Source: Ophelia neglecta
Taxonomy: Eukaryota
Direction: 5' to 3'
Assembly: GCA_965285935.1 (NCBI GenBank)
Contig: OZ260663.1
Coordinates: forward strand, 64,294,001 to 64,358,000
Length of the DNA stretch: 64,000 nucleotides
Shown here: positions 2,054 through 25,133 of the stretch, one piece after another
How positions within the stretch are numbered: position 1 is the first letter of the stretch
Layout of the letters: every line of letters starts with the position of its first letter
The notes under the pieces: model-generated
What the model was told of the DNA's origin: nothing
The model's database searches: none
Seen by the model: only the letters and a program-made list of their open reading frames with translations
Program-made: the position numbers and the translations under genes

Positions 2054-2608
2054 ATAATATCCCGGAACGGAAGTATCGGGGATATTATGTTTTTGCCCTC
2101 CTGCGTTGTCCGCAGCGGCCGCGGATGGTTTGTGTAAGCATGACAACTCAAACAAAATGCAATTTTGAAATTTCTCTCTTGTTTGATGGAATCATGTCCA
2201 ATCAAAACCAAAGTGCTTGATTCTGGATATTGTTATGCATGGTTGACTTTGAAGTTCCAAATTCTGCCAACAGAGGGAGCTTTAAGTAAAAAATATGGAC
2301 ATTTTTCCTTCTGTCTCTTGAATTATTGGTAGTATTGATGCAAAACTTAATGAAAATAAAGTGCATTGATCACAAGATTAATTTAGTAATGCATGAATGC
2401 CATTGAGGTCCCAAATTTTGACATATCTCAGTCTGTTTTATGGAATCATTTTCCACCATAGCCAAATGAACTGATTGGTTTGAGCTGTCATGCTTGGTTG
2501 ACCCTGAAGTTAAACATTCTGCCACCAGAGAGAGCTTTTTGGCAATTATCACAAGAAGTGTTTCGGGGATATACCCTTTGCATTTGTGGACGAATGTGTA
2601 CGCCTGGT
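2054..2608 (+). mobile_element. Non-autonomous Helentron-associated element (HINE; DINE-1/pearl-like)
   Basis: 5' hairpin ataatatcccgga(2054-2066)...tcggggatattat(2076-2088), then a short gtccg-type tract. Internal core repeat ggttgac..tgaagtt..attctgcca.cagag.gagcttt at ~2241 and ~2496. 3' subterminal IR tttcggggatat (2561-2572) and 3' hairpin catttgt-gg-acgaatg (2581-2596), ending cctggtt. Confidence 0.7.
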
Positions 2609-5600
2609 TTGTTTCTTAGTTTGCCTTGTTTCTGGGTGAAAATGATGCCAAAAGGGGCTTTCTCTCTGCTTTGCATTCTCCCTACATAATAGATACATGC
2701 ACATTTTTTCCGTTGTGTTTTTCCATGCACTATTCTTTCAGAACAAAGAATCCAGAGTTTTCCATAGAATAAAATTCATGTAAGTTAAGTGCTTGTGACA
2801 TTTAAGTGTGGTGAGTTTGGTGTTAAGGTGGTGGTGTCCCCTGATGACTCGACATTTCATTAGCCCGGTCTCCCTCGTGCCTCTGATCCATTGCCCTGAT
2901 TTATGTGGTGCCACACACCATAGAAGCTTCTGTTCCAGTCTCCGCCTTAGTCCCTGTCTCAAATCAATTTTAACCCTTCATTTTGCCTCATGTAACCGTC
3001 TCCAGATTAAGAAATATGTGTTTAATATATGAGCCAGTAGATATCATAAATCAGGGTTAATTTAATACTGATATTTAATTTGAAATTGGACTTGCAGCAT
3101 TGCTGGTTTGCTATCGAGATTGGTGGCTGTTTTAAGAGTAGTGTAATATGAAGGTACAAGTGAGAGTAGATATATTGCAGGTATTGTATGGTGATAACAT
3201 TCATTGTCAAGTCTTATGGAGTAGAGACAAGATGGCCTCTCTCAGTGTGCCGTAGAACTTCCTCTAATTAACAGCATCCTCAAGGCATGATTTGTGCTCC
3301 CACTGGACATTTGAATGTGTCCCCTCTTGTCCTCCCCTTTGTCCTTCTAACACCCTGCTAATAATTTGTCCTGGCAGTCCATTGAATGCTGGCTTGCCAA
3401 AATGATCTATACACCAGACTTTGTAGGCTTTGTTAGCCAAGCTCTTTGCCGAAGCAGCAGCATTACAATCACAGCGCTGCCATCTACTGTAAATGTATTA
3501 TTGTTTGTGTGTTGTTTATGTCATTTGTTTATTGAAAATAAACACCTTGAGTTTTAGGACCTCTACATGACTTGCAACATAATCCCCTGGATTTCTTAGA
3601 AGCTATATTAAATGATGCATTCAGACAGAATGGCATATATTAATGGTGACAAACAGAAATGAGTTTACAGTATTTGAGGTTCAATACAATAAGATAGGAA
3701 GACAGTGTTTTAAGACGAGGACATTGATGAATGCTACAAGAGAGTTATCGCATGTTGAAATGTCTCTAATATATCCCTGGCGATAAACTAGTATTTGAAT
3801 TTATAGAACTGTTTGGGTTGCAATAAGATTGCCAGGTAAGATTAAGTTATACAATCAATCTGGTGTTAAGTATCTTTTGATAGCATTTACAGCCCAGGCT
3901 CCATGTTGTATTTGTCGTATCTCTCATGCTCCTGGCTTTTGGTTTTCCTCTCCTGCCACCACTGGCAGAATGGTTCATTCATAGGGGCTCACCTAGGTGC
4001 TCAAGAAGAACAGTAAATCAAATGTTTGGCTGGCAATTTGAAATTACATTCTGTTGAGTCACATAAAGGGCCTTTGGAGAGCCACTACATTTCACAATTG
4101 TTCGCATATAGGGATGCCACTTAGCCTAGCAGCCGTGGATTTATCTGGACTAAGAAGCACTTTTAACTGTGCCATGCCATCTTTGCTTGGTGGCTAAGAT
4201 ACCTAACAAGTCAGTTGATTGTCAGGCATGGTTGATATATGGTGTGATGCCTACACATAAAACTCGTTGCTGTGAAATTGGCAAGCTTTGGTCTTTTACA
4301 GGGCTTCCCCAGACCCTACCACGGCTCCCCAACTCACTGTTTGGTCTTTGCAAAGTGATTTTACCATTTAACTGAACATGTACATTTATCATTGTAGACC
4401 GACCTCAATATGAAGTCTCATTTCCAGATAAGTTTTTGGATGTTAAGTCAATTGCCTTTGTTATTTGGATACTGTAAATTCTGTAATGTTATACATGAGA
4501 AGTTTTATCAGGAAGTTTACCGGTTCTGTTAATACATGCATGCTTGCCACTGTACGTCATGTGCTTTGAGGTTGTGGCCTTGCAGACAAGGAAGCTATAC
4601 ATTGATGTCCGCTTGCGTGTGATGCCATTTTAATGAACCCAACATAATCATGGGCATGTCTAGCTAACTGTCAACTAGCAAAAGGTCAAAAATCATCAAA
4701 AGCACATGTACTTATAGAGCTGAACTAAAAAGCAGTACCTTCTGTATTTATTGTGAAGTCAAGACAGCTACTTTAGAATTGATATTTCCTTAGTTATTTG
4801 TTAACTTTTACTTTTAGAGAGAAAAATAACTAGCGCTGACATAGAATGTTCTTCAGATATTGGGCTTGCTTTTTGTCATATTTATATAAACATGTATATT
4901 TATTGGGTGTTTTATTCTTTTTTTTTAACTATGCAAATTAAAGGGGTTAACATTTGAATGTGGACTTGATTTATTTTCTGTTGGGTATTAATGGCTGTTT
5001 TCTAAGCTTAATCAACAAAAATGTATTTCTATATATATGCATATATGGTAGTAAAAAACTAACAATAATGAACTTTTAGTCAGAATGCCAGACAGGTATG
5101 TCCAAGATGTTTTGACCTCCTTTATGAATGATTTGCACACATTTGAAAATGTGCAATTATAACAGTCTTAATGTGCATTTTGTTTTACACACCTAGAGAT
5201 GCAAAGCACTCAGAGTATGTTAATAGAGTGGGACAGAGCAAAATCATTCACAGTGACCAGTTCATGTGCCTTAGCAGTTAATCCCATCTGTGTCAAAAGT
5301 GGAAGTATAACATGCCAGATATTGAGTGCCTGGGCAAATGTTTATTTAAAGTAGAAAAAATAGTCTTTAGAATTGTTACAATTAGATTCTCTTGGTACCT
5401 TTCATAAAATATGACAATTTTTGAAGTAACTCTATAAAAAGTTGTTTCTCTATGCAAAAGACATTAGAAGGGAATTACATTCTAGAGGGAGTATTTCTGC
5501 CTTAGTAACTGAAAAAAATTATTCCAAACATTTAACAATTAACTGGATATACAGTAGACTATATGATTGTACATGTATGACAATAACTATCATATTAATA

Positions 5601-6689
5601 TAAGTTGTCATGTGTCATGATAATGACGCTGGTTCTGAATTTTGATCATTATTGAGGCTACACAGCCATTTGGAGGTGACACGTAATGCCCTCCTTCTAG
5701 CTGGACGGTTTTCTCTGCATGTCACCTGCCAATTCTACAAGCCTGCAATTGTAAAATGAGATGGCTAATTCCTTGTGTATAAATGTTAACAAATCACTAA
5801 TTAATGCTGTTATTATATGATGCAGTGATGGGTCCTCATATTTTAAGCAGGTGGGAGGATGGAGTATTAGTTTAAGGCATCAGAAGTTAGCACGATGCTC
5901 ACACTATCCACAAACAAAAGAGGTGTTTGGTTTATAGCAACAAAAGAGCGTTATTATGACCATGAGCTGCTGTGATTGGAAGGATAGTCATGTAGAAAAC
6001 TGGCGGTAATCTGATTTTCAGATCTCACAGCAGAATACCAAATATAGGGTCTGAGGAAAAACTGTCTGCAGGGTGGGAAGTGTAGGATGAAATTTAGAAA
6101 AAAACTGTTCTCTCCAAGCTACATACAATGTCATGTAGCGATGTAATTGCCCTATAAGAGTTCCAGTATTGTGTGTTTTTGCAGATTTTTTTCTTTTAAA
6201 ATTTAGATTTTAAGCATGGAACTAATTAATTTTATGTCAAGAGCAACATCATTATTTTGATCAAGGTGTGAGTATTTTAGTGCTAATTTTCAGGATACAT
6301 TAGAATTATACAGATATACTGTAGACAGGGTTCTGTTATTTTGTACATGTATATGAGCCAGCCCCACTGCGGGGTTTGTTGCTGGCACTACACCTATATA
6401 ATTGTATACAACTTGATTACATTTATGTGACAGTGCAGAACATTTTCATATTTGGATTTCATTTTTATTTTCACTGCTTCATGCTAATTTTAGCTCCACT
6501 GTTAATGACCACAGCGGGTCTGGATGAACAACAGATTCACCATCCTTCCTCTGTCAGTGTCCATTGTCTCTTGTCTGAATCCCAGCTCCTCCCTCAATAC
6601 ACATCACAATCAGCATCAGATGTGGTGAGAACATCTTACCATTGAGCCTCACATTTCAATGAACCAGAATTTAAGTTATAGAAATCACA

Positions 6690-7015
6690 TTTGACCTTGG
6701 CCCAAGGTTAAAAAATGCCTTGTGGTGGCTAGATTGTGATAGGCTTGACAGTCATGTTCACTGCCAATAACAGCTCATACTCGGGAGATCCAGTGGTGAC
6801 CTTGACTTTGACCCTGGCCTATTTTTGAAGGTAAGATAGAGAAAACTAGATTGTCAATGCTTGTGGTGGCCTTATGGTGCAGGATAGGCAAGAAAAAGAC
6901 TACTAGTAAAGCATACCCGAGAAATCTATTGGTGACCTCCATGATGAACTAAATCTATGTTCAAGGTCATATGACAAAAATAGATTTCAAACTGCCTGTG
7001 GCTGCTTAATAGTGA
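6690..7015. repeat. Degenerate ~135-141 bp tandem repeat (about 2.4 copies) with TGACCTTGACTTTGACC motif, probably the core array of a HINE-type element
   Basis: tgc(c)ttgtggtggc-like motif at ~6717, ~6858 and ~6993; catac.cg.ga.atc...tggtgacct at ~6776 and ~6912. Confidence 0.55.
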
Positions 7016-10000
7016 GTGTTCAAACATGTTGTAGCTTGAAGGTAGTTTCATTTTCATTGGCAACATACATTCAAAATAACAGTGAAGCTTGATGGACAGG
7101 ATACTTTATCTTGAAAGATTTTTGTAAAGTAACTCCTGAAAACTTATAGGGCCTAATTTGTTGTTTTTTATAATCACAATGTGATAGTAAATCACAAAAT
7201 AGATACAATTTGAAACAATAAACTCAAAAGTTAAGCAAGATGAATTATTAGAATAAAAAAGATATTAAAAGTGTTTTGTTATAAATTATACATGATGTGC
7301 CTGAAATTTTTAAACATCTTGTTTCCAATTAATTAGTTCACACCTATAACATATTTGTATCCAGAGTATATATGACAGGTTAATGGGTTTCGGTCAATTG
7401 TTTTCAATAGTGGTCAACATTGTAAATGACTTCAAGTGGCTTGGCTCCACACATTAAACAAATTGACAGTGTAGTCTTTCTTGTAAAGATGACCTTTGTA
7501 AGAATTGTGACTTGCTCTGTGTGAAAATCTTCTGCAATATATTTGGTGTCTTTTGCCTTTTTTGTCTACCTTACAAAGACCTGTTGAAAGCTCTTTGGGG
7601 GGCCATCATCTTTTTTTCCTCCTTGATATATTATGTTGGCTTGTGCTTTATGAATAAGCCAGGATCATATTCTGCACACCCAAGCCTGTAGATGTTGTAA
7701 GGTGTCACATCAATGAACAGTACAAACATGTATGCTTCCTCTTTTAGCAGTGCCTACAATAATGCATGCACCAAGCAAGATGTATTTTGTATGGCTTACA
7801 TGATTTTTAAAATGGCAATGGTATTAGCTTAATCAAGGAAATGACATCAAGTATACGGAAAATAAAACTGAATTATCCCAGGATGCTACTTGTCTGTGCC
7901 TACAACCCTACAAATGTATTTCTCCTGATTCATTTTGAAGCTGCATTAAAGAAAATTAATACTGAAGCTGTAGAGTGTTTGTCAGCGCATACAGAAGCTG
8001 AATCTGACTGTTTCTGCATGAATATTATCCATGCCAATGTAATTATCACAATTAGTAGGTTTCCATGGAAATGAGCCAAAAATGAACGACAAAACAGTAA
8101 TATACCTTGTGCTGGCACTGTCTTGTACTATGACTGTGGTTAGCTAGGATTGTAAAAAGACGCCAAGGTAGGCAATTTTTATTTGATCACTGTTTTTACC
8201 ATTATCATTTTCTATGTAAGATGGACACCTTAGGCCTTCAAAATCGTGTGGTAGTAGGTGAACTCAAGATGAACTCAATTTGAGCCTTGCTGCTGTCACA
8301 AGCTTTAGACTAGTAAGGAAGTGATCAGTGATCAGATGCTGTGTTTAAATTAGCCACTCTCAATGAGGACTAGCCTGCTGGCTATGTAGCTTTCAGGCCT
8401 CCACATCCGCTGCATTGTATCCGTACACCTGTATGACAAGATGGTTATGGCAGCAATATTAGAAATCTAGCTGTTGTCATGACTCTGTAACACATCTCAC
8501 AAAAACACAATAGGAGAACACCATCTAATTTAAAGCCATATTTTCTGTCATTTGAGATTGTTATTGTCCCTGTATTTTACCTGTGCTACACAGTGGTGTG
8601 TTATTACATGGCTCGGATGACGAGACCGGCACCTTGAGTTAGTTGATAAGTATATATTGCTTTAACTAAACCAATATGTGCTGTCGACCTGCAATATTTG
8701 TGTTCTTTGAATTTTCTTCTTTTCTGGGCATTTGCTGAGTAAGAAGTTGAAGGACAAATTTAAAATTATGCCTGTGAAATGAGACTTTGATTAAAGAAAT
8801 ATACAATGCACATGGATTATTTAGGAACAAATTAAGATTGCTTTAGGTGCTGTTTATTGTTATAACTGAACAATTATACATGACTTGCAACATTTTGCTG
8901 CAAGACTTTGGTATAAAACAGAAATATTGAAAGCCACATGTATGCATGTGTACATTTTAACATCATTGACCAAATTCAGCTTCTACCTGTTTCAGTTCTC
9001 TGAAGCCTGTCTACCTGTCAGATCTTTCAGCTCCCTAATTCCCACCAAAGTTCTTAAAACAGCTCTGATCTACGAGCCATAGTCATTTTGTGATCATTTT
9101 GCCTCAAAAGAACATGGACAAAGGTAGACAGAGAATCAATCAGTATAATAGAAGCTCATCAAATTGGCCAGCAAGGTGCGTATTAGGTGGATTGGAGAGG
9201 AGATGAAAGAGTCGGGTGAGAAGACAAGATGTCCAATTGGTTGCATTGTCGCCTGAGTTTGTCGGGAGAATTTTTGCTTGATGGATACATGTAGATCCAG
9301 CGTGTTATCAAAGGCTGTCACATATTGCCATGCATCTATGCCAATCAAATTTGGGGCATTTAATTACCTCTAGCCGGTGATGTATTAATATACAACCAAA
9401 CAACTGTCCAAACAGAAAACAATATATAAATGTAGATATCATAGCTTGTTCTATTGTAAGAAATGATAATGATAGTTTGTTTTTTTGTAAATGATGATTA
9501 CCGGTATGATGATTTATTTCTATGGTGCTTTTTTTTTTATACAAAATTCCCTTATAAATCAACACCAGTAAAACTTTGTTAGCCCTTAAGTAAAAGGTGT
9601 GGTAGTCAAAGCACTTTTACTTTTTTACACTGGTTTAATATTCCATTATTATCAATGATAATCAAGGAATGAAAAAAACTGTTGAGGTCTTGACAATTGA
9701 CTTATACCTATACAATTCCTGGCCAGCATTGTGAAATATGAGCTGATCAGGTAAAAATTAGAAGCACTGAACCATTGAACTATAATATTTTGATAGAGGT
9801 CAATGGGATTTCCAAGAATTTCCAAGCCAATTAATTTATATGTCTTACAAGTTACTCTTTATTTTGATTAATATGGTTACATCTTAGTAAATGTATTAAG
9901 CTATCTGGAAGATGTGTAACTTGGATTAGAAATTCCTCATTATGAAGAAATATTTAACATATGATAATCATGATGGCTGAATGCTAAACTAACATCCGCT

Positions 10001-10226
10001 ATGTAATGACACACTCATTGCAATCCATATTCAATATTCAAGATAATTACTTCCCTCAAGTGACAACATTTAGAATTTGCGTCATAAAAATTGGCATGGT
10101 CAAGGCCCAGATTTCCTGGTCATTAGGGCAAATGCAGGTTTTTGCTTCTTTGTCGGTTTCCCACAGTATGAGCTTTCTTAGAATCATTTTATGACAAGAC
10201 TGTGTGCGTGTCTACCAAGTCCCTGC

Positions 10227-10362
10227 AATTTGCTGAAAATTGGGGGTTTTCAGACATGGGGTCCATGAGAAACAAGCAAATTGCACCTGTCCCCCATCCA
10301 ATGTTCTTGTTTCCCCAGGAACCCGACAACATCTGAAAATCTGCTCCTTTTTTCAGCAATTT
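10227..10362. repeat. Imperfect inverted repeat (~57-64 bp arms, ~15 nt loop), possibly inside a decayed MITE
   Basis: Left arm blocks ttgctgaaaa / ttttcaga / gggtcc / gaaacaag / attg pair in order with right arm blocks caat / cttgtttc / ggaaccc / tctgaaaa / ttttcagcaa. Confidence 0.7.
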
Positions 10363-11439
10363 CCCTTTAGTTTGTTATATTATTATTTCTGTTGTCCAAT
10401 ATAGACTCGGCAGGGGACTCCAGCTTCTTGGCCATGTGCTTTCAAGGCAGACTTTTCCTTTGGACACCCTAAGACCTAAAATAAAAACAACCGGCCTGCA
10501 ATGCTTTGGCCACCAAAGCTTGGCAGGACTGTATTAAAGACTTCAAAACAAGATAGATTTTTAGGCAATGGTCTGTCAAATTTGGGCATCTATGTGAATT
10601 TTGCCAAATTTCATTTTCAGTTTGAAAAATGATAGTTTGTCAAATAGTTACTTACCAATGGATGTCATTGTGCAACATTATGTATGTATTATTGTGAACA
10701 CGCAAATTGGCAGATACCGACCAATCAGGTTTTCTTGTACATGAGTAGTAAAGTAAATTTCGGCAGCCATCATGACATCACAGACAATCTACATCATTTT
10801 CAATTTGTGACATAAAAAATCACCCATAAAAGCAGAAGTGAATGGATAAAAAAGTATCTCTTCCTTGAAAGAGTTCCAACCTCTTTTGGAGATTTGGTCA
10901 TTTTGGTCCTATATTCAACCAGACCATTTTTAAATTAAACATTTTAATGTTTTATTAAAGGTAACAGAATTAATGGTATACAAAAATAAATCATTTTACA
11001 TCAGCCTTTTTGTGTCCTAATTTGCAAGTTTGTCATGCACAAGAAAAATCTCTGCACAGTGAATGGAATTTATATTTCATATTTCTACTTAGATGCAGAT
11101 CTTGCTGTGAAGAAATTATTGCCACTGTCTAATATCCTCAAAGCAAATAAAATGTCACTTTTGTAATTGCTAACCAGCTCTGTGGTTCCTCCTCTACCCC
11201 AATCTATTTCAGTGTTATGCCTTAATGCTCAGATATTACAGTACATCCTTTAAGAAAGGAATAGCAGAGCACAAAGGGGTTTTATGTTTCAGACTGTTAC
11301 CCATGGACAGTAATCAATAGCCCACATGATGAGGAATGATGCCCATTACTAGACCATTATCTGTTATGTAATCGTTGGCCAGTGTAGTTACATGTATTAG
11401 GTCATTTTGTAACAGGTGTTTAAAGACATATCACACTTA

Positions 11440-11518
11440 GCTAATTGGTTCTTTTCTTATCTCTTTCAGGTATGTATTCATTCATCTATAGAGATATGCT
11501 GACAAGGTATATGTAAGT
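11440..11518 (+). other. Candidate recursive splice site (3'SS directly followed by 5'SS) with a downstream RS-exon donor
   Basis: gctaat-tggttcttttcttatctctttcag|GTATGT (junction 11469/11470). Downstream donors aag|gtatat (11507) and tat|gtaagt (11513). Confidence 0.55.
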
Positions 11519-14500
11519 TGTACAATGGTTACATTACATTTTGTAAGAATCACATAGAAACTTGACTTAATTATATAATAGATAAAGCAGGAAAATGAGA
11601 GCAGTCATTAATTTTATCATGAAACAAAGTAAGTGGGATATATGCTTCATTCTGAACTTCTTTGTCATTCTTTTGAGCCATACTGCATTCTATTTAAACC
11701 CCGCGGGTAATAAAGATCCATTACTGGTGTGGCTGTCACATGGTTTTCTTTTTATATCTTATATGATGGACATACATAATTAAGCCCCAGGGCCTAGGAT
11801 TACAGTTCCTCCATACATTCCGGATCTTAAAGTTGTCTCATATTCACAAGATATCACTGCAATTCTTGCCTTTGGCCAAAGCAATATCTTGCAGACAGTT
11901 TTGCTGCTGGCCAAATTGATGCAGCCATGACTTTATACTTACATGTACATGTATGCATGGCTTACAAGGTTTATCAAGTGGATATCTTGAAAACAAGGTA
12001 TGACTTGTAATTTTGGCAGGAAGAAAGTAGGACACTCAAACTGTCAGCAGGCAATCTTTTGCAGTCCTAAGCCTGTGTACACCAGTGTAGACATAGCTAT
12101 AGTAATGTCCACCAGGTGGAGGAAAGAGACATCCAAAAGAAGAAGAGTTCTCAAGGTGATCATAAATGGCGATAAATTGATACTCCAACCATTTTCTGAT
12201 TGCCCAAATTGTTTGCCTGTCTTGGCTGAGTCTTCGGTCACTTTTGTGAAATTTCCCACTTACAAAGCTCCGGTGGGTGTTTATCAGATATTAAACCCGT
12301 CTAATGAGCAGATACAGGTGAACAGGTCCTATGGGGCTAGCACAGGTGCTTGTGGCACTAATTATTTACAACAAGGAGGCTCAGGGAATCTCTAACAGTG
12401 GCCCATCCCTTTTATAACTTTGGAACAAACGCCTGTCTGTTTAGATTTATAAATAGCATGGAAAGAGGGATTTATGTATTATTCCTTCCTTATGCCATTA
12501 TCCTTCCTTATGTTAAAGTTTTTGGGGGTCTGAAAGCTCTTCATTTTGGTTATACAGGTAGTGACCACCTGTATGGCCTGGACAATGAGCTGTAGTGTCA
12601 ACTTAGAAATGAAATCGCAGAAAGATTACTCTCGCTTTTAAAGAAAATGTATCACAATAGTTTTAGAATTTAGGCATGTATTTAAGCTGTACATGTGCCT
12701 ATACTGTTTTTTCTTGTGTACTAAATTTGGCCTTTATTCAAGAAACAAACTGGGTTTTTTTTAGCACGAAGCATTAACTTGGTCAGTGTAAACAGACATA
12801 ATTTGTTCTAAATCCCATGGTCCCTCTATGTAATCCTTGGGAGCCCCTGATTTATGTCTCATTGTTCTAAAATGTACCAGAGAATAGACAATTCTAGTTC
12901 ATTTGCACGCAAGACACCTGTTTACTGGTATTCTAAGTGCATTTACCCTTTTTATAGATAATCCATATTGGCATTTTAAGACATTGTTAACAGTTTTGTC
13001 ATTCCTGTTACACTTTATAGGAAATCAATGTAGTTGTCTAGATGATGCACCCTTGACTCTGCACTGTATGCTGAGGTTTGCTCAGGCAATGATATAAAAA
13101 AATGTGTGTTTACTAAAACTGAAACAAGGTATGGATATAAAAGCACATTGTGTGTCAGATACCCAGAAAGAACACAACAATTTCACAAGTGACTACCTCA
13201 AAAAAGGTGTCTGTACGTATAGTTATACTATGAGACTTTTAGAACATACATTTACATACAGTCTTGTACACATGGTCATACACACTGCATGAACTCAAAC
13301 TGTGTTCTATCCTACTATAAACAATATACAAAGAGAGTAAATGAGTTGTTTCATATTAAAATGACATTGAAAGCATTTCTATGTGCACATAAGTCATGCA
13401 TGCTGGTATATTAACACATATGCTTATTGTTATTAACTGAAGTACAATGCCAGATAATGGGCAGTACCATCTTTAAAATGAGGTATGGCTTTCATAAATG
13501 ATATACACTAGTGCTCCTTACACCTTGATGAATAAAAGCAGTATATTGGAAGAAATTTATTCCACCTTAAAACAACAAAATATGAAATTAGGTCCCAGTT
13601 TCAAATGGATTATAATGACCTGTCATTTTAGTTTTTTCTGTGAAAGATGCATGATGATAGGTATAAAAGTGAAATTATTGTTTCTCATTTTGGTAAGACT
13701 AAGTATTTTAAAGCATTCCATCGTCCACTTGGCTCTGCCGCCAATTTTTGCTCAGATTCTTCACCTGCTTATTTCAGCTAATATCCTTTCTGTAATGGGT
13801 TTGTCCAGTCTGTGTATGATTGGCTGTCTCACCAATGGAGATCTGCAGGCAAATCACCATGGTGATGAAGAACGGATACCACAAGTTCATTCCATGTAAT
13901 TGAACAGACTTTGGCCATGTCGCCTATTGTTCTCAACATATTGCTTCCACCAGTCTCAATTTTGCAATTATTCGTTCTTTGGTCAGGCTTGCCCCTGCAA
14001 ACTTCCACGTTGACATTCTCTAAATCCATGAACTGGCACTTTTTACCCATCAATAAGAAAATTAATATCAATGTTTTAATCATTCCAGCTACAAGCTGTC
14101 AATTAGAGAATGTTTTCTAGTGCCAATTACTGTTGGCGCTATCCAGTTGGAAGAGATACATTGTTCAGATGGCAGGGGTCTCTGTAGCTTAAAGCTGTGC
14201 ACAGGTGATAGATCAGTGGATTGTCAATGCACTACTACTGCCTTGTTGAAACCTGCCTGGAATTTTTTAATAAGTTCATTGCAAAACCAATTGGAAACAA
14301 TGTTTTCTATATACAGTTTAATACATGCCAAATGTTGCCTGCCCAGATTGATTTGCCACATCATTGATGAAGATGGCAATGTCCTTTCTTGCCAAAATGA
14401 CATTTATCATAATGAAACTTACTGGGAAGTTTTTCTGTTTTTTGATGATGAGTCTGATGCTGTCTTGTTAAGGAATCCCTTCACTGTCATCCCATGCCAA

Positions 14501-16640
14501 AACCATACCTACTAGCCATTACCTGATGGGGAATTGTGGCGTGTCCATGGCAACCACAAGGTGGAACTGACGCCAGGGCATTTAGGCCTGTTCAATAATT
14601 TACAAATCATTTTGCTAGCTTTGGTTGTGGACATGTTGGTGTTTTCTCGGAGGCACTGTCCTTGCTCTGCATCTTGGCCAGAATTTGGCATGCGCTGTAT
14701 TCTGTGGTCGTGCTTAAGTTGAAATTGTGTACTCTCTTTGTATCGCAGGTTGGGCTAGACTGGGGTAATTGATGCAAGGTAGTGGCATCTTTTACAAAAA
14801 TCAGTGGTTGTCTATGAAGCAGAGAATGTTAGCATAATGGTAGAGTGCTGTCATCTGATGCTCTGCTGGTAATGATGGTGTATGGCTTGGAAGTGATGGA
14901 CAAGCTGGAGAAGATTAACATGTACAGAGAACACAAGACAGGCCAAGGTGGAATGGTCACTGCTCAAACCAGCTACACTAATGACAACGGTTCACTGTCG
15001 ATCATGAGGACACAGTATCCTTCATGCTTGCTCAGTGGTGGCCATGAAAGTTGGAAGAATTGCACACTATAAAGTATTCCTTGGAATGTCTGACAGTATT
15101 TTGACACATAAAGATTTCACAAATCTTAATTCGATAGTTGAATTTCAAATTGTATTCATATATTATGTGTTATGCTCGAACCAGCAACATTTGATTTGAT
15201 ATTATAAGTGATAAAATGATAATTATTTGTGGCTTATGTTTCAAACTAAATCTTAACCAAACATCTATATGAACAATAACATTTGCAACCATGTTGAAAA
15301 TAACAGATTTGAGAAAAGTGTGAATTGGACAAACTAGGCTTGACTTGTTACCATTGTTCACTTTTACCTCTGTGAACCATAGAGAGGCTTGAAGTAGTAT
15401 GTCAAAACTAGTTCTCATCAGATGTCAGCAAAGGCTGGTCTATGGTTACTACTTTCAAGCTTTCCCCATTATTCAACAGCAGGCTTAGAAGAGGAACCAT
15501 CAAAATGTTTTGATCACAAAGTATTTTCCTGTCCATATTGATTTACTGCTTTTGGAGATGGGATTCATTTAAAGTTCTAAGATAATTACCAATCATTTTA
15601 AAGGCAATAAAATGTGCACATTCATTTGGCTTGAGAATATTAAAGAATTAATCAGGAAACACAATCAGATAATGTTTATCAAGAAGAAAGTTGAAAATTT
15701 TTCGTTGAATATCATGATATAGCTGAATTAATTTGCACTCTCACTTAGATATTTTATAGTAAAATGTTGTTCACAAATTCCTGATATTGAATAAAAGTTT
15801 TATGAATTTATTTTTCCAATCAAGTGTGCACTATAAATTGAATAATTGTGTTTGTCAGCTGGATATGTATGTAATTAATCATTATATCTGGGGTTGGCCA
15901 GTCCTTTATTGGTTTTCACCCTAATACCACTTTATATATACAATTTATATCTACTTAGAAGTAGTATACTGCCTACAATAAACTGAAACACAACAGGTAA
16001 ATACACGTATATATATAAAAAACAAAGTGATTTTGTAAGAAGAAAATGTAAATGATTATGATAAACCAGCTGTGTATTTTTTGACAAGTAATAATAACGA
16101 AGATAAGATGCATTTCATTTGACAGCATAACACTGAGCCATTTTACAACTTGCTCTGATTTAGAATGGTTTTAAGGGGATGATGTAGTTAACAGGATATT
16201 GTACATTATCAGGAGCAGGAGGAGGTGGCCTTTACTTTAACCCCAAACTATAGAAGGCTGGTTTGACTGGCCTCCTTTAAAACATCTCTAGGCACATGTA
16301 GGTGGTTTCTGTCAATCATGAATTATTTTTAAAATTAAGTGTTATTAATCTTTATGGTACTAAAAAGAGCCCTGGATGTATATTTATTAATGTTAACCTG
16401 CAACACCCATGCATGTGAGCCTCGGTTATTAAGATGGAGGTTTCATTTTTCACTTGCCACTCCCTTCTGGCACCATAACACCAGGTGTGGTTTGTTCTGG
16501 GTTCAGAGGCACACCTTAATGTGTAATCAGATATCAGTCACTTGTGTGCATGTAGATTTACTCCTGTTACAGTGATGTTTGTAGCAAAAAAATTCCTGCT
16601 TATGGCACTAAGCTGATTGAACAAAGCACTTATATTCTTA

Positions 16641-17170
16641 AGAGTAGAGTTTATTCAACAATAGCCATGACAGGCTGTGAGGTGTACAACAACGATCTAT
16701 AAATTGCACATGTGCGTTTGAACGGACAAAACCTTAAATAATAAACAATAGGGATGTATGAAAAGGGAATACAAATACAAATCCTCCTGTTTATCTATGC
16801 ATGTAGCTGCTTCTGATTAACATGGCTTTTCTAATATATATTGCTAAATTATTAAGTGTTTTCACAGTTTCTGTTTTCATAAGGGCAATAAATTTAAACA
16901 TGCTAGGCCTAACTATGTAATATCTCTGTATATATTTTGCATTTAATTCAAAGTATAGACAGCATTCTATGATAAAGTGGTAATCATCTTCCAATACATA
17001 ACAGACAGACACAATCTTTCTACAAATGGAATTTGCGGTTTACACCAAGCACCAGTTTCCACCTTAAGTTCATGGTTTCTTGTTCTAAACCTAGCCAAAA
17101 TATATATTTTATCAACAGATAGTTTGGAAATATAAGTTTTAAGTTTACAAAGAAAGGGATACATTTCTAA
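16641..17170 (-). mobile_element. 5'-truncated non-LTR retrotransposon (LINE): frameshifted ORF2 C-terminus with CCHC-type motif, plus 3' UTR
   Basis: Overlapping minus-strand ORFs give LARFRTRNHELKVETGAW..PFVERLC / CYVLEDDYHFIIECCLY...YIQRYYIVRPSMFKFIALM...LNNLAIYIRKAM. This is the typical post-RT zinc-knuckle tail of invertebrate LINEs. AATAAA on the minus strand at 16650-16655 is followed by a ctctactct tail. The clade cannot be assigned by eye. Confidence 0.85.
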
Positions 17171-20100
17171 GTGATTTACATGCTTCAGTTTCTAGAGGGA
17201 CATGTCTGGCTATCAGTTCTGTAAATTTACAATAAAGGGGTTTGATGATTGGCTGTTAAGATCCCAAGACTTTCAGTTGTCATCATGGTAAATGAATAAT
17301 TCAATTGTTGAATTATTTTATTTTCTTGATTGAATGATCTCACCCTACATCAAAATTTCTAAAGCCTTCTGAAAGGTTATTTAAACAAAATGTTTATGAT
17401 AATTTTTGGGTTGTTTTCGTAAAAAGGAGCAACTTTAAATTCTAAGGAGTGTTTATGAAATTTAAGAATTTGGCTAAATGTATTTGCCATGTTCAAACAA
17501 ACTGCCATGAAGTAAGCCATTTCCTGGAGCACTTAAGGCTCCAGAGAGGGAGCTTCCATAGGTCATACTAAATCTTTTGAGTTACATGCACATTTAAAAT
17601 TTAATATATATATTTTTTTTATTAATGTACAATCATGTATATAATTATTTGAATATGATATCATATCCCTTTATGAATTTTTCCTTTTTTCATGAGAATC
17701 AGAATAACAGTCCTTAATTCAACCATATAGTTCAATTAAATGTTGTATGTTTAGTCAGATGTTCAAATCTCAGAAACTGACTCCTTGTGGATGCATGTAC
17801 ATATACATATGTACAAAAGTAATGTACATGTACATTTACATAATTCTTCAGATAACACAAAGGTAACTGAGTAGGTCTAAGTGGAAATGATTACCATGGT
17901 AGGATGTCATGTGACCCACAATTAAGGATCACAACATTAGCCAGAAAATGAAGCAAAGTCCAACTAGTGAAACTACAAATCCATCAATCAGACAAAATTG
18001 TCCATCCTTTCCTACATGAATAAATAATGTTGTCTCTTGAGAAAGGAATGGGCATCCTTTGTGCTTGAGAAAATTTCAAGAACATTTAGTTTACCTTTCT
18101 CCCATAAAATAGTTCACTTGCTTTAAGAGAAGGCCCTAGAGAAACACTTTGTGGCAACATTTTGTCCCTTTCTCTTTTGTTGACCAGACAAGTGTTAGAA
18201 AGACGAGACTGGTGATAAAACAGGGAACAATAAGCCACGGGACATAGTCCAGGCTAATTTACCTTTGTAGCTCTCTCAGAGGGGACAGTGTAAAAGGATC
18301 ACCGTCAAGAATGGCAGTCTGGTTTTATCAAATCACCTCTTGCTGTCCACGCGACCTGACACATAATATAGCCATGATGCATGCACAATACATTGTTCCA
18401 GCCATCTTTGATCCTTGCAAGCTTCCTGCATGAAAACTGAGGTCATGTCAAGTTCACAATGAGAATATGAGATTTAAGACAAATATCAAATGACTAGAAA
18501 ACAGGCATGCTATGTTACTATTGTATCTTTGCACATGATCTTATAGACTTGTGAAAGAGAACTGCATATTTTTCATCAAAATAAAAGACATTTTGAAAGA
18601 AAACATGCAAGAATATATGATAAAGAATAGCGCTTGAGCAACATAAATTCAGCCAGCAATGTTATCTGTCATTGATTGGGGAGAAAAAAAGTCTGATAAG
18701 TGGATGAATGGTCAATGACACATTAGATGCCCTTTGGTCCATTTTTCATGCACTGCTTTGAGGTGATTGGTCAAAAAAAAAAAATCATTAGAAAGGGACT
18801 ATAAACAAAGCAGTGATTTAAGCTGAAGCAGGAAATTGAATGAGAAGCCTGCAGCTGAAGATACTGCAGCTGAATAGCAGTGAATTTCCTTAAAAGCCTA
18901 ATCTAGATATGATCAGGTGGTGGCAGTGGCTTGGATGCAGCTGGACTGAGGGGCGCTGTACCTTTTTGGTTGACAGGCTCTGCTTTCCACATTGATTCGG
19001 TGCTGATGCTGGTCCAGTCACTCACCATCACCTGATGATCTAGGGTGTACATCCTTGTTAGCCTTACTGTATCACATGCTAAAAGCCATTACAAGCACAC
19101 ATCATTTTCAATCAGCCATCATTTCCATCAACTTGACTACAGAGTTTGCTAGCGGCTTGAGGTCACGTTTTTGGGGCTGATTATAGCGTTCAACAGGTGA
19201 CACTAACTCACCCCTGAAATAAAACATTATAATATGGATGCTCGTATACCAATTATCATTGCCTGTAAGAAAATGGCGACCTGACATGTCATGGTAATTT
19301 TGGGCCAATGTTAAACTAGAGAAGGCCACGAAAAATATTGTTTTTGGGCACTGTGCAAGTCTACCACATGTATATCAGGGGATAAAAAAGGTCTCTCCCA
19401 GGACACTTACAGCATCAACCAGTGAATACTGTCCAACATTATTCCTAAAAGTGTTTCAGAAAGCCTCCAAAATTGACATTGTTGCCTAGTTTTTTTGTCA
19501 GTCCAAGCTGACTAGAAGAATTTTAGTTGGAAAGTTCAAATTGTATGGGATTGACATGATCAGTATCAAAGGAATACCAGTCATATGTTTTTGCCATGAC
19601 TTTACACAATCATTCCTTAAAAAAGGAGCCTAACGTTTAATTTTGCATGTTAGGACTCTGGAATATCTTTTTGTGCCAGTGCAAGAATTGAAAATAAAGC
19701 CCAAAGCCAATTGTTGTTGATTCCACCTAGCACCAGGCAGTTGTGTTATCCTCATAAGTCATCTAAAAGTAGCCCTGTCCGGTTTTGCTTTGGACTCAAA
19801 TGTAGACATGTGGTGTCTCCACAGATATTTTTTTTACTGGTGCTGGCCACAAAAGTGGAAGGAACAAGAGACCTAATGCATTTCCCATTAATTAGATGAG
19901 GATATGGTAGGAATTCAGATTGAGTTGAACATTTATTAGGCAGCATGGAGGAAGCAGAATTAAAAGCTTGCTCTCAGATTCCTTCTAATCCCCAGCACAT
20001 GTCCGGGTTCGGCAATGACAGCCACTCCTCTACAATGGTTATTTATTGGTTTTCTTTCTACCAGCCCAATAAAAGTTTAGCAATATCTCATCGAATCTAT

Positions 20101-23100
20101 CAGTGGCACAATCCTGTTCACTCGCGCCAGAGAATTTGACTTGTCGTTCTAATCTCACTGGTGACAGCTTTAAGACAATTTTGAATTGAGAGTGAATAGG
20201 GTATCAATAATGCCTATTGTGGTTTATTGGAAAATATTGGCCTCACACCCATAAAGTTGGTTTGCCTGAAGATATTGTGATTTAATAGAGAGTGGAATCA
20301 TTAGATATTCGGCGGCTGTGGCTTGGTATTATGTGGTGTCATCTATCACTTGAGCAAATCTTATCCGGCGTACATTATTGGCCTCCGCCGAATCCTTTGA
20401 CATTGGCGTAAAGACATATCCCTTCTCACCTTCCTGTGACCCACGATGAAAGTTGCCAGCGATATCAGGCGGAATTCAGAATCGCCTCTTTCCATGACTT
20501 GAATGCCAAGAACCCTTTTCACAACACAGTTCATTGAAAGTCGATCAGAAGGCTTCACCTCGGTGGTAAATATTAATAAAAAAGATGGAGAGGGGATGGA
20601 TAGGGGCTGTAATAGAGCTAGAGAGGCATACCAGTTTGTTAGCAAGTTGGAGGCACCGAGTGAGAGATCAGCACACTAAATTAGAGCTATCTGCTGGTCG
20701 CATGTGAGGGTGTGCTTTGCATGCTACCTGCTCATTGGGAACCCACTCCCTCTCCAACAGTGTCAAGTCGCTCACTGCAGAATCATGGCTCTATTGATCA
20801 TGTTTTATCTGTTCAAAAAGAAATATGGTGCGGCCTTGATCCCTGGTGTCAGATGCAGATACTTTTAATGTTAATTGAAAGTACTGGGTGGTCGCGTAAT
20901 GCGGCTCTCCGCAGACAGGTAAAGCCCAGTTGCTTAGAACACTTGCCTTTTAATGGAATGTTATTGCAGGCGGCTCTTGTCACCAAGTATAGAAGCTTTG
21001 CCATCTTCTGTCAAATTGATTAATGCAAGAGTAATCTAGAGTTGGTGGTAATCGCCACCACAAATAAGAAATTCTTTATGTGTTTACTGCCAAGGTTGGT
21101 TTAATAATGCACTAGCAGACTGCCTTTCCCAGTAGTTTTATCCTTTCTGGCTTGCAAAAAGTTATTTTTATATTGCTGGAGCAAGCTTTCAAATGGAACA
21201 AGGGTTGACAGAATGTAGCACCTACATCAATCTCAGACATGTTGCTAAAGTGATTGTGTGTGAGCTGTTGGATGCATCCATGTTGTAGGTGTACGAGAGA
21301 AATAAAGAGCCAGAATGAATCAGGTGATCAGTGGCTGGCACGCATCAATAAACCAGCGTATGAGGAATGGAAAATAGCAAGTACAAATTTGCCTAATGAG
21401 ACCATATGACGAATTCAAAAAAACAGTCTGTGTCTCCTTGGGTTAATGTCTTGAGAAGCTAAATTTAGTATCAGCTAGGATTACGTGAATGTGGTCTCTG
21501 TACCTTTTTTCTCTGCTATAAAGTTAATACCGCCAGCAGACTATCTTAACAATCTAGCTGCTGAATAGAGCAATACAGGTAGTTATCATGTGAAACATGT
21601 ATGGAAGGCTACATGAGATTAGTTTAACTAGATGTTGTGTCCCTTAGAAAGTAGCATCTTGCCGTTTCCTGTGAGTGCTCTTTACTGCAGTGTTTCTCAG
21701 TTCATTTCTCTAAAGGTATTCATTGCACACATGCATGTACATGTAGATGTACATGTATGGTGCTGGTTTGTTTTGTGCTGCTACAAGATATGTGAACAGC
21801 TGAGAAGCCTTTCAATTGTCTCACATACATGTATAATGATGAATGCCTTTTTTGTAGTCTATTCATAGCTTTTCTTTTCACTAATCTAGAAAGAGAAAAA
21901 ACATGGTGAGAGAACAGAATCAGTGTCGCTAGTTTGAGAAGGTGGTGCCATCAGTCAGTTGTCTGCTACTTTCACAATCTGTGGCTAAATCTAAGCCGGT
22001 GCCATGCCCTGTGGACAAGTTGTTGCAATGCCCTCAGATTTCCTGCCTCTGTGGCCACCCTGCCTCTCAGGCTTAGCTCAACCACCTGATGCTTACTGGA
22101 ATATACTTATAGGCTCAGCTGATGTAGAGCTGTGTTGATTTTAGCACCCATTTTTGGTGAAGGAGCAGGCAGATAATCAATAGTCAAATAGACTTGGTTG
22201 AGGTCTGAGGGCCTTCATCACCTCCACCAGACATCATCAGCGTGCACCATGGCAGCCAGTTTGGAGGCAACTCTCTCAACAGGGACATGTCAGCCTTGGA
22301 CTTACTCCATAAGGCCAGCTCTTCCTGGGCAAAATTAAAATTGGGGCTGATGGAGAATCTTAGAGTGGGCTATAAAATACATATATCTTGCTCAATAGGT
22401 GGCCCTTCACAACCTGCAAGCTGAAGCCTCAAATCTTCTGCTGCTGAAAATCGCTTTTTGAAAAAGTGAAGTCGGAAATTGAGTTTGCCCATGTAGTCAT
22501 GTTTTATGTGGCGTCTACTCTGTCTTGAGACTCCATGTCTGACTGGCAGTTGACAGCCTGCACCTTTATTTAACAAGGGACAATCAACCAAAAGACACCT
22601 ACAAGTACATGTACACTCCATACCAGGCTATGTCCCCCACACTTTACTTTGACAAACACATCACTATTACACAAAGCCATCATCTCTATCTACATGTAGT
22701 CTTCACTGAATTGGGACAGAAATACATGTATATTTATATCATTTGAATTCGTCTCCAGTAAAAAGAGTTCCCAACACATACCTTAGGTACATGTACACAT
22801 ACATGTACAAGTGTTATATTGGTCATTTTTGCCCAAACCTTTTTCATAGCAGGCAAACTGGACGGAGAGATAGCTTACCTTGTATTCTGTACACAGTCTA
22901 TCCACAAAAAAATTTTGATTTCAACACTGGGTCTTTGTTATCAATAAAGAAAGCTGTGTATAAATATATAACCAGGGGGGTCTACTGGGAACCAGAACAG
23001 TCTTTATAGTGCAATCTCTTTATTTTGGCACACAATGTCTAGGAATGTATTGAAAGCAAATAGCAATCCACATGCCACAAATAAAATGCGGAGCACTAAG

Positions 23101-23295
23101 TTTGCCCTGTTCGTCACTAGCTCATATGGCTAAGGCATACATTGTCAGGAGATCAGAGAGTCTAAGACCATAAAACGGCGATAACCTTTAATTGATAATG
23201 ACCTGCACCGTTGTTCAGATTACACAAACCTTTATTTCTGGCTACAGTTAATTAAAGCAGATGGACTTTAGAAATGTGTAGGGATATAGCAAGCT

Positions 23296-23870
23296 CATAG
23301 AAATGCAATCAGGTGCTCTTGTATTGTAGTAAGACCATAGAGATCAGTCAGATACTCATGTATTGTAGTTAGATCATAGAAATCAGTCAGATACTCATGT
23401 ATTGTGGTGAGATCATAGAGATCAGTCAGATAGACAGATACTCATGTATTGTAGTGAGACCACGGAAATCAGTCAGATACTCATGTATTGTGGTGAGATC
23501 ATAGAGATCAGTCAGATAGACAGATACTCATGTATTGTAGTGAGACCACGGAAATCAGTCAGATACTCATGTATTGTAGTGAGATCATAGAAGTCAGACA
23601 GGTGCTCATGTATTGCAGTGAGATCATAGAAATCAATCAGGTGCTCATGTATTGTAGTGAGATCATAGAAATCAGTCAGATACTCATGTTTTGTGGTGAG
23701 ATCATAGATATCGGTCAGATACTCATGTATTGTAGTGAGACCATAGAGATCAGTCAGATATTCATGTATTTTAGTGAGACCACAGAAATCAGTTAGATAC
23801 TCATTTATTGTATTTAGACCATAGAAATCAGGCAGGAGCTCATAAGTTGTATTGAGATAATAGAAACCAA
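23296..23870. repeat. 39-bp minisatellite, about 14 copies (consensus tcatgtattgtagtgagatcatagaaatcagtcagatac)
   Basis: The periodicity is directly visible. Two units carry an extra 8 bp (agacagat, ~23432 and ~23518). This repeat explains the repetitive ORFs 23512-23889(-) and 23530-23796(+). Confidence 0.95.
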
Positions 23871-25071: not shown

Positions 25072-25133
25072 TCCAATCAATGGCTGTCGGTAAATAGGTC
25101 TACATGTAGTTTAGCTTTAACTCTTTAAAAAAG
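25072..25133 (+). other. Candidate cassette exon with two donors (18 nt in frame, or 62 nt with a premature stop)
   Basis: cttgac...catctttctacctgccttttttccttcacag| acceptor at 25071; donors tcg|gtaaat (25090) and aag|gtaagt (25134). Confidence 0.45.

What the first reader, a model, noticed from the sequence alone, without database searches (positions are those of the whole stretch)
11440..11518. Textbook recursive-splicing (ratchet) site with a stop-containing RS-exon in the >42 kb CELF intron
Seen: branch-like GCTAAT, then a pyrimidine tract (tggttcttttcttatctctttc), then AG directly followed by a consensus donor GTATGT. A second donor pair (AAG|GTATAT, TAT|GTAAGT) lies 37 and 43 nt downstream. 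Read in phase 0, which is the phase of this intron, the segment gives VCIHSSIEIC* (TGA 11500-11502), and both lengths shift the frame. Established: this is the architecture of recursive splice sites in long Drosophila introns and in long vertebrate neuronal genes, where inclusion of the RS-exon introduces a premature stop. Inference: the intron is removed in steps and the site could act as an NMD switch. I am not aware of recursive splicing having been characterised in molluscs or other lophotrochozoans.
Basis: partly seen in the sequence, partly recalled or inferred. Interest (0 to 1): 0.85.

Follow-up and report, generated by a model that had tools for sequence, protein, structure and literature searches.

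The report
Candidate recursive splice site, CELF intron
A splice acceptor fused directly to a splice donor, followed by a 43-nt cryptic exon, sits two-thirds of the way into a 93-kb intron of an invertebrate CELF RNA-binding-protein gene; it probably lets the intron be removed in two steps as in fruit flies, but no RNA data exist to prove it.

Summary
It has a CTAAT branch site, an 18/20 pyrimidine tract, CAG|GTATGT at 11468-11475, donors 37 and 43 nt downstream, and an in-frame TGA.

The host intron is 92.8 kb and phase 0. It lies between the CELF exons ending ...TLPG and starting MNRP... The site is single copy and is the only one of its quality on either strand of the intron.

No RNA run is available for this organism, so use of the site could not be tested.

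Indirect support comes from the whole genome:
- The composite signature (Y8-AG|GTRWGT, then GTRAGT 20-55 nt on) occurs at 40 independent loci, this one included.
- Three control patterns give 7-11 loci each.
- The real loci form eight same-strand clusters 40-130 kb across. The controls form none.
- The real loci carry fly-type ratchet-point features (TT at -6/-5, C at -3, long tracts). This site has all of them.

U1 pairing favours the regenerated donor over the cryptic-exon donors. I therefore expect default skipping of the cryptic exon, not an NMD switch.

Verdict: a credible but unproven new member of a known kind. This scan has already noted about 35 such sites elsewhere in this genome, which other notes take for an annelid, not a mollusc.

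The parts
1..42386 (+). Part of the 92,808-bp phase-0 CELF intron that lies in the window. The intron starts at genome C5:64243579, 50.4 kb before the window.
   Evidence: Upstream exon ...[16 protein letters not shown] found in fetched upstream DNA. Acceptor tttcag|ATGAAC at 42386/42387. Intron length computed.
11441..11445 (+). Branch-point-like CTAAT (YTNAY). The branch A is at 11444, 26 nt before the junction.
   Evidence: No AG occurs between 11441 and the acceptor; the AG-free zone is 27 nt.
11446..11467 (+). Polypyrimidine tract: 18/20 pyrimidines before the AG, T at -6, -5 and -4, C at -3.
   Evidence: TT at -5/-6 is found in 196 of 197 fly ratchet points (bioRxiv 10.1101/006163).
11468..11475 (+). 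Ratchet point: acceptor AG (11468-11469) fused to donor GTATGT (11470-11475).
   Evidence: It is one of 40 independent genome-wide matches to the composite pattern (C5:64305460-64305518).
11470..11512 (+). Cryptic RS-exon of 43 nt (or 37 nt, 11470-11506, if the weaker donor is used). It is out of frame (3n+1), with TGA at 11500-11502 in phase 0.
   Evidence: In the class, the spacing from ratchet point to the first downstream GTRAGT is 21-60 nt, mostly 34-60; here it is 43.
11507..11518 (+). Two RS-exon donors: AAG|GTATAT (GT at 11507) and TAT|GTAAGT (GT at 11513).
   Evidence: U1 duplex energies are -5.9 and -5.4 kcal/mol, against -8.4 for the regenerated ratchet donor.
42387..42436 (+). Downstream CELF exon MNRPIQVKPADSESRA(G), the target of the second splicing step.
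62607..62735 (+). CELF RRM2 exon (..[42 protein letters not shown]..). It fixes the gene's identity and strand.
   Evidence: The best solved-structure matches are CELF2 and CELF1 RRM1-2, E about 1e-19.

Best explanation
This is an intronic recursive splice site (ratchet point) with a cryptic RS-exon, of the type described in Drosophila. It sits in the 92.8-kb intron that splits the RRM1-coding exons from the linker exon of a CELF (Bruno-like) gene. The proposed sequence of events is inferred, not observed. (1) About 62 kb into the intron, the CTAAT branch site, the long pyrimidine tract and CAG, together with the GTAAGT donor 43 nt downstream, are recognised as a tiny exon. (2) The upstream exon (...CCT GGG) is spliced to 11470, which removes 61.9 kb. 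[quoted passage not shown] That step removes the remaining 30.9 kb, including the 43-nt cryptic exon. The mRNA ends up the same as after one-step splicing (TLPG-MNRP). If the downstream donor wins instead, a 43-nt (or 37-nt) frame-shifting segment with an in-frame TGA is included. That should give a non-productive, probably NMD-sensitive transcript, which I expect to be a minor by-product rather than a regulated switch.
For: Shown directly by the sequence:
- The anatomy and coordinates are correct.
- The site is on the sense strand of a 92,808-bp phase-0 intron of a gene whose exons match CELF/Bruno-like RRMs.
- It is single copy.
- It is unique in the intron on both strands at the stringent threshold, where the Markov expectation is 0.02-0.28 per 164 kb.

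Genome-level evidence for the class:
- Y12-AG|GTAAGT gives 38 hits against 15 for the reversed control.
- 16 of the 30 loci I fetched have a GTRAG donor 28-60 nt downstream, against about 5% expected (binomial P about 1e-13).
- The composite Y8-AG|GTRWGT-N20-55-GTRAGT hits 40 independent loci, this one included. The reversed control gives 11, the GT-to-GA control 7, and the AG-to-AA control 9-10.
- 17 of the 40 loci form 8 same-strand clusters spanning 40-130 kb. Only 0.14 adjacent same-strand pairs are expected, and the controls have none.
- Class loci differ from control loci in tract length (at least 18/20 Y: 18/40 vs 0/17), TT at -6/-5 (34/40 vs 7/17) and C at -3 (34/40 vs 6/17). This site has all three, plus a branch motif and a 27-nt AG-free zone.
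- GTATGT ratchet donors recur in the class: 7 composite hits. One is clustered with a GTGAGT site, and one lies upstream of the other CELF gene.

Fit to the literature:
- The regenerated donor pairs with U1 better than the RS-exon donors. This matches the fly rule that the ratchet donor outcompetes the cryptic-exon donor (PMC8605326).
- A short, out-of-frame cryptic exon is typical of fly ratchet points (same paper).
Against: - There is no RNA evidence of any kind. The only public runs holding this DNA are three genome-like contig sets from one sample.
- No orthologous intron could be fetched, so conservation of the site is unknown.
- This site is a singleton, not part of a cluster. Roughly 7-11 of the 23 singleton composite hits could be chance.
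- GTATGT sites are less enriched than GTAAGT sites: only 4 of 19 Y12-AG|GTATGT loci carry the downstream donor.
- Under relaxed criteria one comparable motif lies on the antisense strand of the same intron, at window 34473.
- The 5' segment of 61.9 kb would be near the upper limit seen in flies (63.6 kb).
- The link from 'over-represented class' to 'recursive splicing' rests on analogy with flies and vertebrates.
Confidence: 0.68

Rival explanations
1. It is a regulated poison cassette exon (37 or 43 nt) of the CELF gene. The acceptor at 11469 and a donor at 11507 or 11513 are used to insert a frame-shifting, stop-containing exon that lowers CELF output through NMD. The GT at the exon's first base is either incidental or only modulates inclusion.
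For: The segment is 3n+1 long and carries an in-frame TGA. RNA-binding-protein genes commonly autoregulate through poison exons (general knowledge; poison exons are discussed in PMC8605326). Expressed RS-exons exist in flies and mammals (PMC6224609, listed).
Against: An ordinary exon starts with GTRWGT by chance only about once in a thousand. The control pattern with the first GT changed to GA, which still captures ordinary short exons, gives only 7 genome-wide hits against 40, so the excess is tied to the fused donor. U1 pairing favours the regenerated donor (-8.4) over both cassette donors (-5.9 and -5.4), which predicts skipping. No transcript data show inclusion.
Confidence: 0.13
2. It is a chance juxtaposition of splice-like motifs in AT-rich intronic DNA, and the spliceosome never uses it productively.
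For: The controls show that 7-11 composite matches per genome arise without the full signal. This site is a singleton. One relaxed-criteria look-alike lies on the antisense strand at window 34473. The absence of SNPs across 11407-11702 is not significant (P about 0.09).
Against: None of the 17 control loci combines at least 18/20 pyrimidines, TT at -6/-5 and C at -3, whereas 14 of the 40 class loci do, this one included. A chance hit would fall on the sense strand of an intron over 50 kb long only a few per cent of the time (my estimate). The local Markov expectation is 0.02 per 164 kb for the acceptor-donor part alone.
Confidence: 0.14
3. It is the acceptor of a cryptic or alternative last exon. 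Splicing into 11470 is followed by cleavage and polyadenylation (AATAAA at 11709-11714), giving a truncated transcript that encodes only RRM1.
For: A strong acceptor is present, and an AATAAA hexamer lies about 240 nt downstream. Cryptic last exons are known in long introns of neuronal genes (PMC7997972, listed).
Against: At this base composition AATAAA is expected about once per kb (my estimate). This reading does not explain the fused donor or the second donor at +43, which are the enriched features of the class. No RNA data exist.
Confidence: 0.05

Closest known systems
Drosophila intronic ratchet points with cryptic RS-exons (Ubx, kuz, Bx, luna; Duff et al. preprint 10.1101/006163; Joseph et al., PMC8605326)
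   Same: An acceptor fused to a donor inside a very long intron. A prominent T-rich tract with TT at -5/-6. A short (about 50 nt), out-of-frame cryptic exon closed by a second donor. A ratchet donor predicted to be stronger than the cryptic-exon donor. Several sites per long intron at other loci of this genome.
   Different: The donor is GTATGT rather than the fly consensus GTAAGT. There is only one site in a 93-kb intron, and its 62-kb first segment is at the fly maximum. The organism is a lophotrochozoan, where the process has not been described. There are no junction, saw-tooth or lariat data here.
Vertebrate RS-exons in long neuronal genes (Sibley et al. 2015, as summarised in PMC8605326 and PMC6224609)
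   Same: The model is the same: exon definition first, then competition between the reconstituted 5' splice site and the RS-exon 5' splice site. Inclusion introduces a premature stop. The host is a long, neuronally important gene.
   Different: Only about nine fully suppressed intronic sites were firmly noted in mammals. This genome shows a fly-like, clearly over-represented class. Vertebrate large introns show little ratchet-site enrichment (PMC2773006).
Autoregulatory poison exons of RNA-binding-protein genes
   Same: A short frame-shifting, stop-containing segment inside an RNA-binding-protein gene that would trigger NMD if included.
   Different: Poison exons do not need a donor at their first nucleotide, and their bodies are usually highly conserved. 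Here the fused donor is the distinguishing, enriched feature, and inclusion is predicted to be disfavoured.

Membership tests
Recursive splice site / ratchet point (zero-nucleotide exon type) | 3' splice site (branch site, pyrimidine tract, AG) immediately followed by a 5' splice site consensus (GTRAGT-like) | tested here: met
   CTAAT, an 18/20 pyrimidine tract and CAG|GTATGT at 11441-11475. It matches U1 at 8 of 9 positions in the genomic context. The regenerated form has a duplex energy of -8.4 kcal/mol.
Recursive splice site / ratchet point (zero-nucleotide exon type) | Lies in the sense strand of a long intron and is not in a repeat | tested here: met
   The 92,808-bp intron is defined by the CELF exons on the + strand. 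The 401 bp around the site are single copy. No ORF of 110 aa or more in the intron part of the window has a Pfam match.
Recursive splice site / ratchet point (zero-nucleotide exon type) | TT at -5/-6 and an unusually strong pyrimidine tract (196 of 197 fly ratchet points) | tested here: met
   T at -6, -5 and -4, C at -3, and 18/20 pyrimidines. The criterion comes from 10.1101/006163.
Recursive splice site / ratchet point (zero-nucleotide exon type) | Cryptic RS-exon: a second donor some tens of nt downstream, with an exon body that is usually out of frame | tested here: met
   GTAAGT at +43 and GTATAT at +37. Both lengths are 3n+1, and TGA is in frame. In 16 of 30 GTAAGT-type loci of this genome the downstream GTRAG donor lies at 28-60 nt.
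Recursive splice site / ratchet point (zero-nucleotide exon type) | Ratchet donor stronger than the RS-exon donor, so the cryptic exon is skipped | tested here: met
   U1 duplex energies: -8.4 for the regenerated donor against -5.9 and -5.4 for the RS-exon donors. This is a crude proxy, not a trained splice-site model.
Recursive splice site / ratchet point (zero-nucleotide exon type) | Belongs to a motif class over-represented in the genome's long introns | tested here: met
   40 loci against 7-11 in three controls. There are eight same-strand clusters and significant feature differences. Intron and strand context was verified by me only for this gene. For the CELF paralog the context is plausible.
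Recursive splice site / ratchet point (zero-nucleotide exon type) | Splicing intermediates: exon-to-ratchet junction reads, saw-tooth intron coverage, and lariats to and from the site | not testable with these tools
   The look-up of sequencing runs returned no RNA run. Read laying could be run only on DNA-like contigs.
Recursive splice site / ratchet point (zero-nucleotide exon type) | Evolutionary conservation of the AG|GT core against unconserved flanks | not testable with these tools
   No related animal genome can be reached. Within the one sequenced sample there is no variant in 11407-11702, but the expectation is only 2.4 (P about 0.09). At another locus, a 75-nt island covering a ratchet point and its RS-exon is the only collinear match between paralogous regions.
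Poison exon / NMD switch | Frame-shifting or stop-containing cassette | tested here: met
   37 or 43 nt long, with TGA at 11500-11502 in phase 0.
Poison exon / NMD switch | Actually included in some mRNAs, stabilised when NMD is blocked, and regulated | not testable with these tools
   No RNA data. Donor competition predicts low inclusion.

The most novel reading that the evidence does not exclude
Fly-type constitutive recursive splicing through cryptic RS-exons is widespread in this lophotrochozoan genome, which is probably an annelid. There are at least 30 high-stringency sites, several per giant intron. That would make the ratchet-point-plus-cryptic-exon design ancestral to protostomes or older, rather than an insect speciality. 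Both CELF genes of the animal carry such a site with the unusual GTATGT donor. In this gene, occasional use of the downstream donor would give a poison isoform that could feed back on the dosage of a splicing regulator.
Probability: 0.55. Interest if true: 0.6.

Novelty: new member of a known kind. Interest (0 to 1): 0.42.

Why it matters
Recursive splicing has been demonstrated in Drosophila and in a few vertebrate neuronal genes. Whether the fly-style abundance of intronic ratchet points is an insect peculiarity or an old solution to giant introns is still open. The 2009 motif survey covered only insects and a sea urchin among invertebrates (PMC2773006). The paper library holds nothing on molluscs or annelids.

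This site is one concrete, testable example in a key splicing-regulator gene. The genome-wide counts made here show that it belongs to a real, clustered class in a lophotrochozoan. One total-RNA data set from this animal would settle both the site and the class.

Tried and rejected
1. RNA evidence. The look-up of sequencing runs on window 8600-14500 (kind rna) listed only three genome-like contig sets from one sample and no RNA run. Read laying on them gave DNA contigs only, with 47 variants in 5.9 kb and none in 11407-11702, which is not significant. It showed no junctions relevant to splicing.

2. Taxon. I located the mitochondrial COX1 gene (contig C223, TGA read as Trp) and searched its longest stop-free piece. 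The hits carry no organism names, so I did not resolve mollusc versus annelid myself.

3. Homology to fly bruno genes. 'bru' terms are absent from the supplements of PMC6110457 and from the text of 10.1101/006163. No paper links CELF2 to recursive splicing.

4. Nested gene or transposon as the owner of the acceptor. The eight ORFs of 110 aa or more in window 1-42300 have no Pfam match, and the site is single copy.

5. Paralog conservation as a proxy for selection. The C9:7.03/7.39 Mb pair proved to be a recent duplication, 87.5% identical over 4 kb, so it is uninformative. This site has no second copy.

6. Additional ratchet points in the same intron. There are none above chance; the relaxed scan gave one sense and one antisense composite.

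7. Spliced models. I made no joined (spliced) sequence model.

Full report
**Observation**

The sequence is as described:
- GCTAAT is at 11440-11445. Its CTAAT core fits the YTNAY branch consensus, with the branch A at 11444.
- A pyrimidine tract spans 11446-11467, and 18 of the 20 bases before the AG are pyrimidines.
- AG at 11468-11469 is followed directly by GTATGT at 11470-11475.
- AAG|GTATAT (GT at 11507) and TAT|GTAAGT (GT at 11513) close segments of 37 and 43 nt.
- Translation from 11470 gives VCIHSSIEIC and a stop, TGA at 11500-11502.

**Gene and intron**

The window is G000:C5:64294001-64358000, + strand. Two downstream exons are in the window:
- MNRPIQVKPADSESRA(G) at 42387-42436.
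- An RRM2 exon at 62607-62735.

The upstream exon is not in the window. I fetched 100 kb upstream and found two further exons:
- The first coding exon, MAALANGP...IKLFVGQIPR...MHK(G).
- The exon [28 protein letters not shown], ending at C5:64243578 with GGG|GTAAGA.

The best solved-structure matches of these exons are Bruno-like 4 and 6, CELF1 and CELF2 (E 1e-18 to 1e-24), so the gene is a CELF gene.

The intron is 92,808 bp, phase 0 and 38% G+C. The site lies 61.9 kb from its 5' end and 30.9 kb from its 3' end. Exons were handled one at a time by reference. I made no joined model.

**Is the motif more than chance locally?**

- In the whole intron, on both strands, this is the only place with at least 16/20 pyrimidines followed by AG|GTRNGT.
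- In 164 kb of real sequence it is the only such site on the sense strand, and there is none on the antisense strand.
- Markov simulations (orders 1, 3 and 5) give 0.02 sites per 164 kb per strand at 18/20 or better, and 0.15-0.28 at 16/20 or better.
- The 401 bp around it occur once in the genome.
- No ORF of 110 aa or more in the intron part of the window has a Pfam match.
- With relaxed criteria (at least 13/20 pyrimidines, AG|GTRNG, and a GTRAG within about 90 nt) there is one sense hit, this site, and one antisense hit at window 34473. Loose versions of the motif therefore do arise by chance.

**RNA evidence**

There is none. The run search found three genome-sized contig sets from one sample and no RNA run. 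Laid on 8600-14500, they behave as DNA: contigs span the site, there are 47 variants in 5.9 kb and none in 11407-11702. The absence of variants is not significant (P about 0.09 for that gap and 0.53 for the 79-nt element).

**Genome-wide test of the class**

The genome is essentially seven chromosome-sized contigs, 738 of 762 Mb.

Simple pattern:
- Y12-AG|GTAAGT gives 38 hits against 15 for the same pattern read backwards.
- In 16 of the 30 loci I fetched, a second GTRAG donor lies 28-60 nt downstream. The background is about 5% (binomial P about 1e-13).

Composite pattern, Y8-AG|GTRWGT, 20-55 nt, then GTRAGT:

| Pattern | Hits | Independent loci |
|---|---|---|
| Real pattern | 49 | 40, after dropping two repeat arrays; this site is one (C5:64305460-64305518) |
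| Reversed control | 20 | 11 |
| Fused GT changed to GA | 7 | 7 |
| AG changed to AA | 16 | 9-10 |

Clustering:
- Seventeen of the 40 real loci form eight same-strand clusters 40-130 kb across.
- Random placement gives 0.14 such adjacent pairs, with a Poisson tail about 4e-14.
- The controls have none.

Features of class loci against control loci:

| Feature | Class (n=40) | Controls (n=17) | P |
|---|---|---|---|
| At least 18/20 pyrimidines | 18 | 0 | 0.0004 |
| TT at -6/-5 | 34 | 7 | 0.003 |
| C at -3 | 34 | 6 | 0.0004 |

These are the hallmarks reported for fly ratchet points: TT at -5/-6 in 196 of 197, a prominent tract, and a short cryptic exon with its own donor (10.1101/006163; PMC8605326).

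I conclude that this genome carries a real population of ratchet-point-type elements. That they are recursive splice sites is an inference by analogy.

**Where this site stands in the class**

It has every class feature: an 18/20 tract, T at -6 and -5, C at -3, a branch motif at -26, a 27-nt AG-free zone and a 43-nt spacing to GTAAGT.

Points in its favour:
- Fourteen of the 40 class loci, and none of the 17 control loci, combine the three tract features (P = 0.005).
- On my rough estimate, a chance hit would fall on the sense strand of an intron over 50 kb long only a few per cent of the time.

Points that weaken it:
- It is a singleton. About 7-11 of the 23 singletons may be chance, so on the pattern alone the odds are roughly even to 2:1.
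- Its GTATGT donor is the less enriched type. Y12-AG|GTATGT gives 22 hits (19 independent) against 7, and only 4 of those 19 carry the downstream donor.

The tract features and the verified context raise the odds that it is a true member to about 0.9 by my reckoning. Allowing for the untested step from motif class to mechanism, I put recursive splicing at about 0.68.

**Mechanism and the NMD idea**

After the first step the recreated donor would be GGG|GTATGT. Its U1 duplex energy (-8.4 kcal/mol) is close to that of the native donor of the upstream exon (-9.2). It is better than both RS-exon donors (-5.9 and -5.4).

In flies the stronger donor wins, and weakening the ratchet donor forces inclusion of the cryptic exon (PMC8605326). 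I therefore expect the 43-nt segment to be skipped by default. Inclusion would give a stop after ten codons and probably NMD, as a minor by-product. A regulated switch is possible but nothing here points to it.

An ordinary poison exon that merely happens to start with GTATGT is unlikely. The GT-to-GA control, which still captures ordinary short exons, stays at background.

**What is known**

- The held paper library has no paper on recursive splicing in molluscs or annelids; the only co-occurrences are incidental.
- The 2009 survey of ratchet-site enrichment covered sea urchin, fly, mosquito, bee and beetle among invertebrates, and found enrichment in all of them (PMC2773006). A further invertebrate phylum is therefore expected rather than startling.
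- I found no record of a ratchet point in fly bruno genes or in CELF2.

**Earlier notes of this scan**

Thirty-five notes on recursive or ratchet sites already exist for this genome, among them ephrin, THOC2, RYK and Eph introns, all without RNA data. One pair, at C5:14.04 and 14.07 Mb with 48-nt cryptic exons, came up independently in my pattern searches. Several follow-up notes treat the genome as an annelid. I could not confirm the taxon, so 'mollusc' should be read as 'lophotrochozoan, probably annelid'.

**Verdict**

This is a credible, statistically well-founded but experimentally untested recursive splice site, a new member of a known kind in an unstudied clade.

Noticed in passing
G000:C7:46504004-46504055 (- strand); the paralog's exons are at C7:46486276-46486389 and C7:46460173-46460298 (- strand): The genome's second CELF gene also has a composite ratchet-point hit with a GTATGT donor (TTTTCAG|GTATGT, with GTGAGT 36 nt on). 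It lies on the gene's strand, 17.7 kb upstream of the first coding exon. That exon begins 4 nt before its ATG behind an acceptor, so the hit probably lies in a 5'UTR intron.
   Followed up: partly
G000:C9:15318781-15318845 (+), C12:5722170-5722235 (-), C1:39023824-39023956 (-): A ratchet point plus RS-exon (CAG|GTGAGT ... CAG|GTAAGT) is the only collinear match between 4-kb regions on C9 and C12: 75 nt at 85% identity, in DNA that otherwise does not align. A third copy, 77% identical over about 120 nt, lies on C1. This looks like a splice cassette conserved among paralogous genes.
   Followed up: partly
G000:C9:7027753-7031813 and C9:7384359-7388419: These two regions are a recent inverted segmental duplication, 87.5% identical over the whole 4 kb. 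Each copy carries the same ratchet-point motif, so the two composite hits count as one independent locus.
   Followed up: yes
G000:C8:80339973-80575878 (- strand): Four to five ratchet-type sites lie on one strand within 236 kb (80339973, 80398421, 80525298, 80575822). This is probably one gene with giant introns removed in many steps. The host gene was not identified.
   Followed up: no
window 34473 (- strand): An antisense look-alike: 16/20 pyrimidines, CAG|GTAAGA, and a GTRAG 37 nt on. It may be chance or part of an antisense transcript. It has an AG inside its tract.
   Followed up: no
window 10720-10900: A short dispersed repeat. Summed contig depth rises from about 27 to about 300, with many loose ends and small skips in the DNA contigs of all three runs.
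   Followed up: no
G000:C8:83012694-83013039 and C9:50269566-50270757: These are arrays of repeated copies (55-nt spacing at the C8 locus) whose unit contains a pyrimidine tract followed by AG|GTAAGT or AG|GTGAGT. They inflate raw motif counts and were removed from the tallies.
   Followed up: yes
G000:C223:4697-6037 (+): This is the mitochondrial contig. COX1 has 8 in-frame TGA codons, consistent with TGA read as Trp in an invertebrate mitochondrial code. The nearest database fragment is 96% identical but unnamed.
   Followed up: partly
window 9427-9498: A small imperfect tandem repeat: period 31, 2.4 copies, 69% matches.
   Followed up: no
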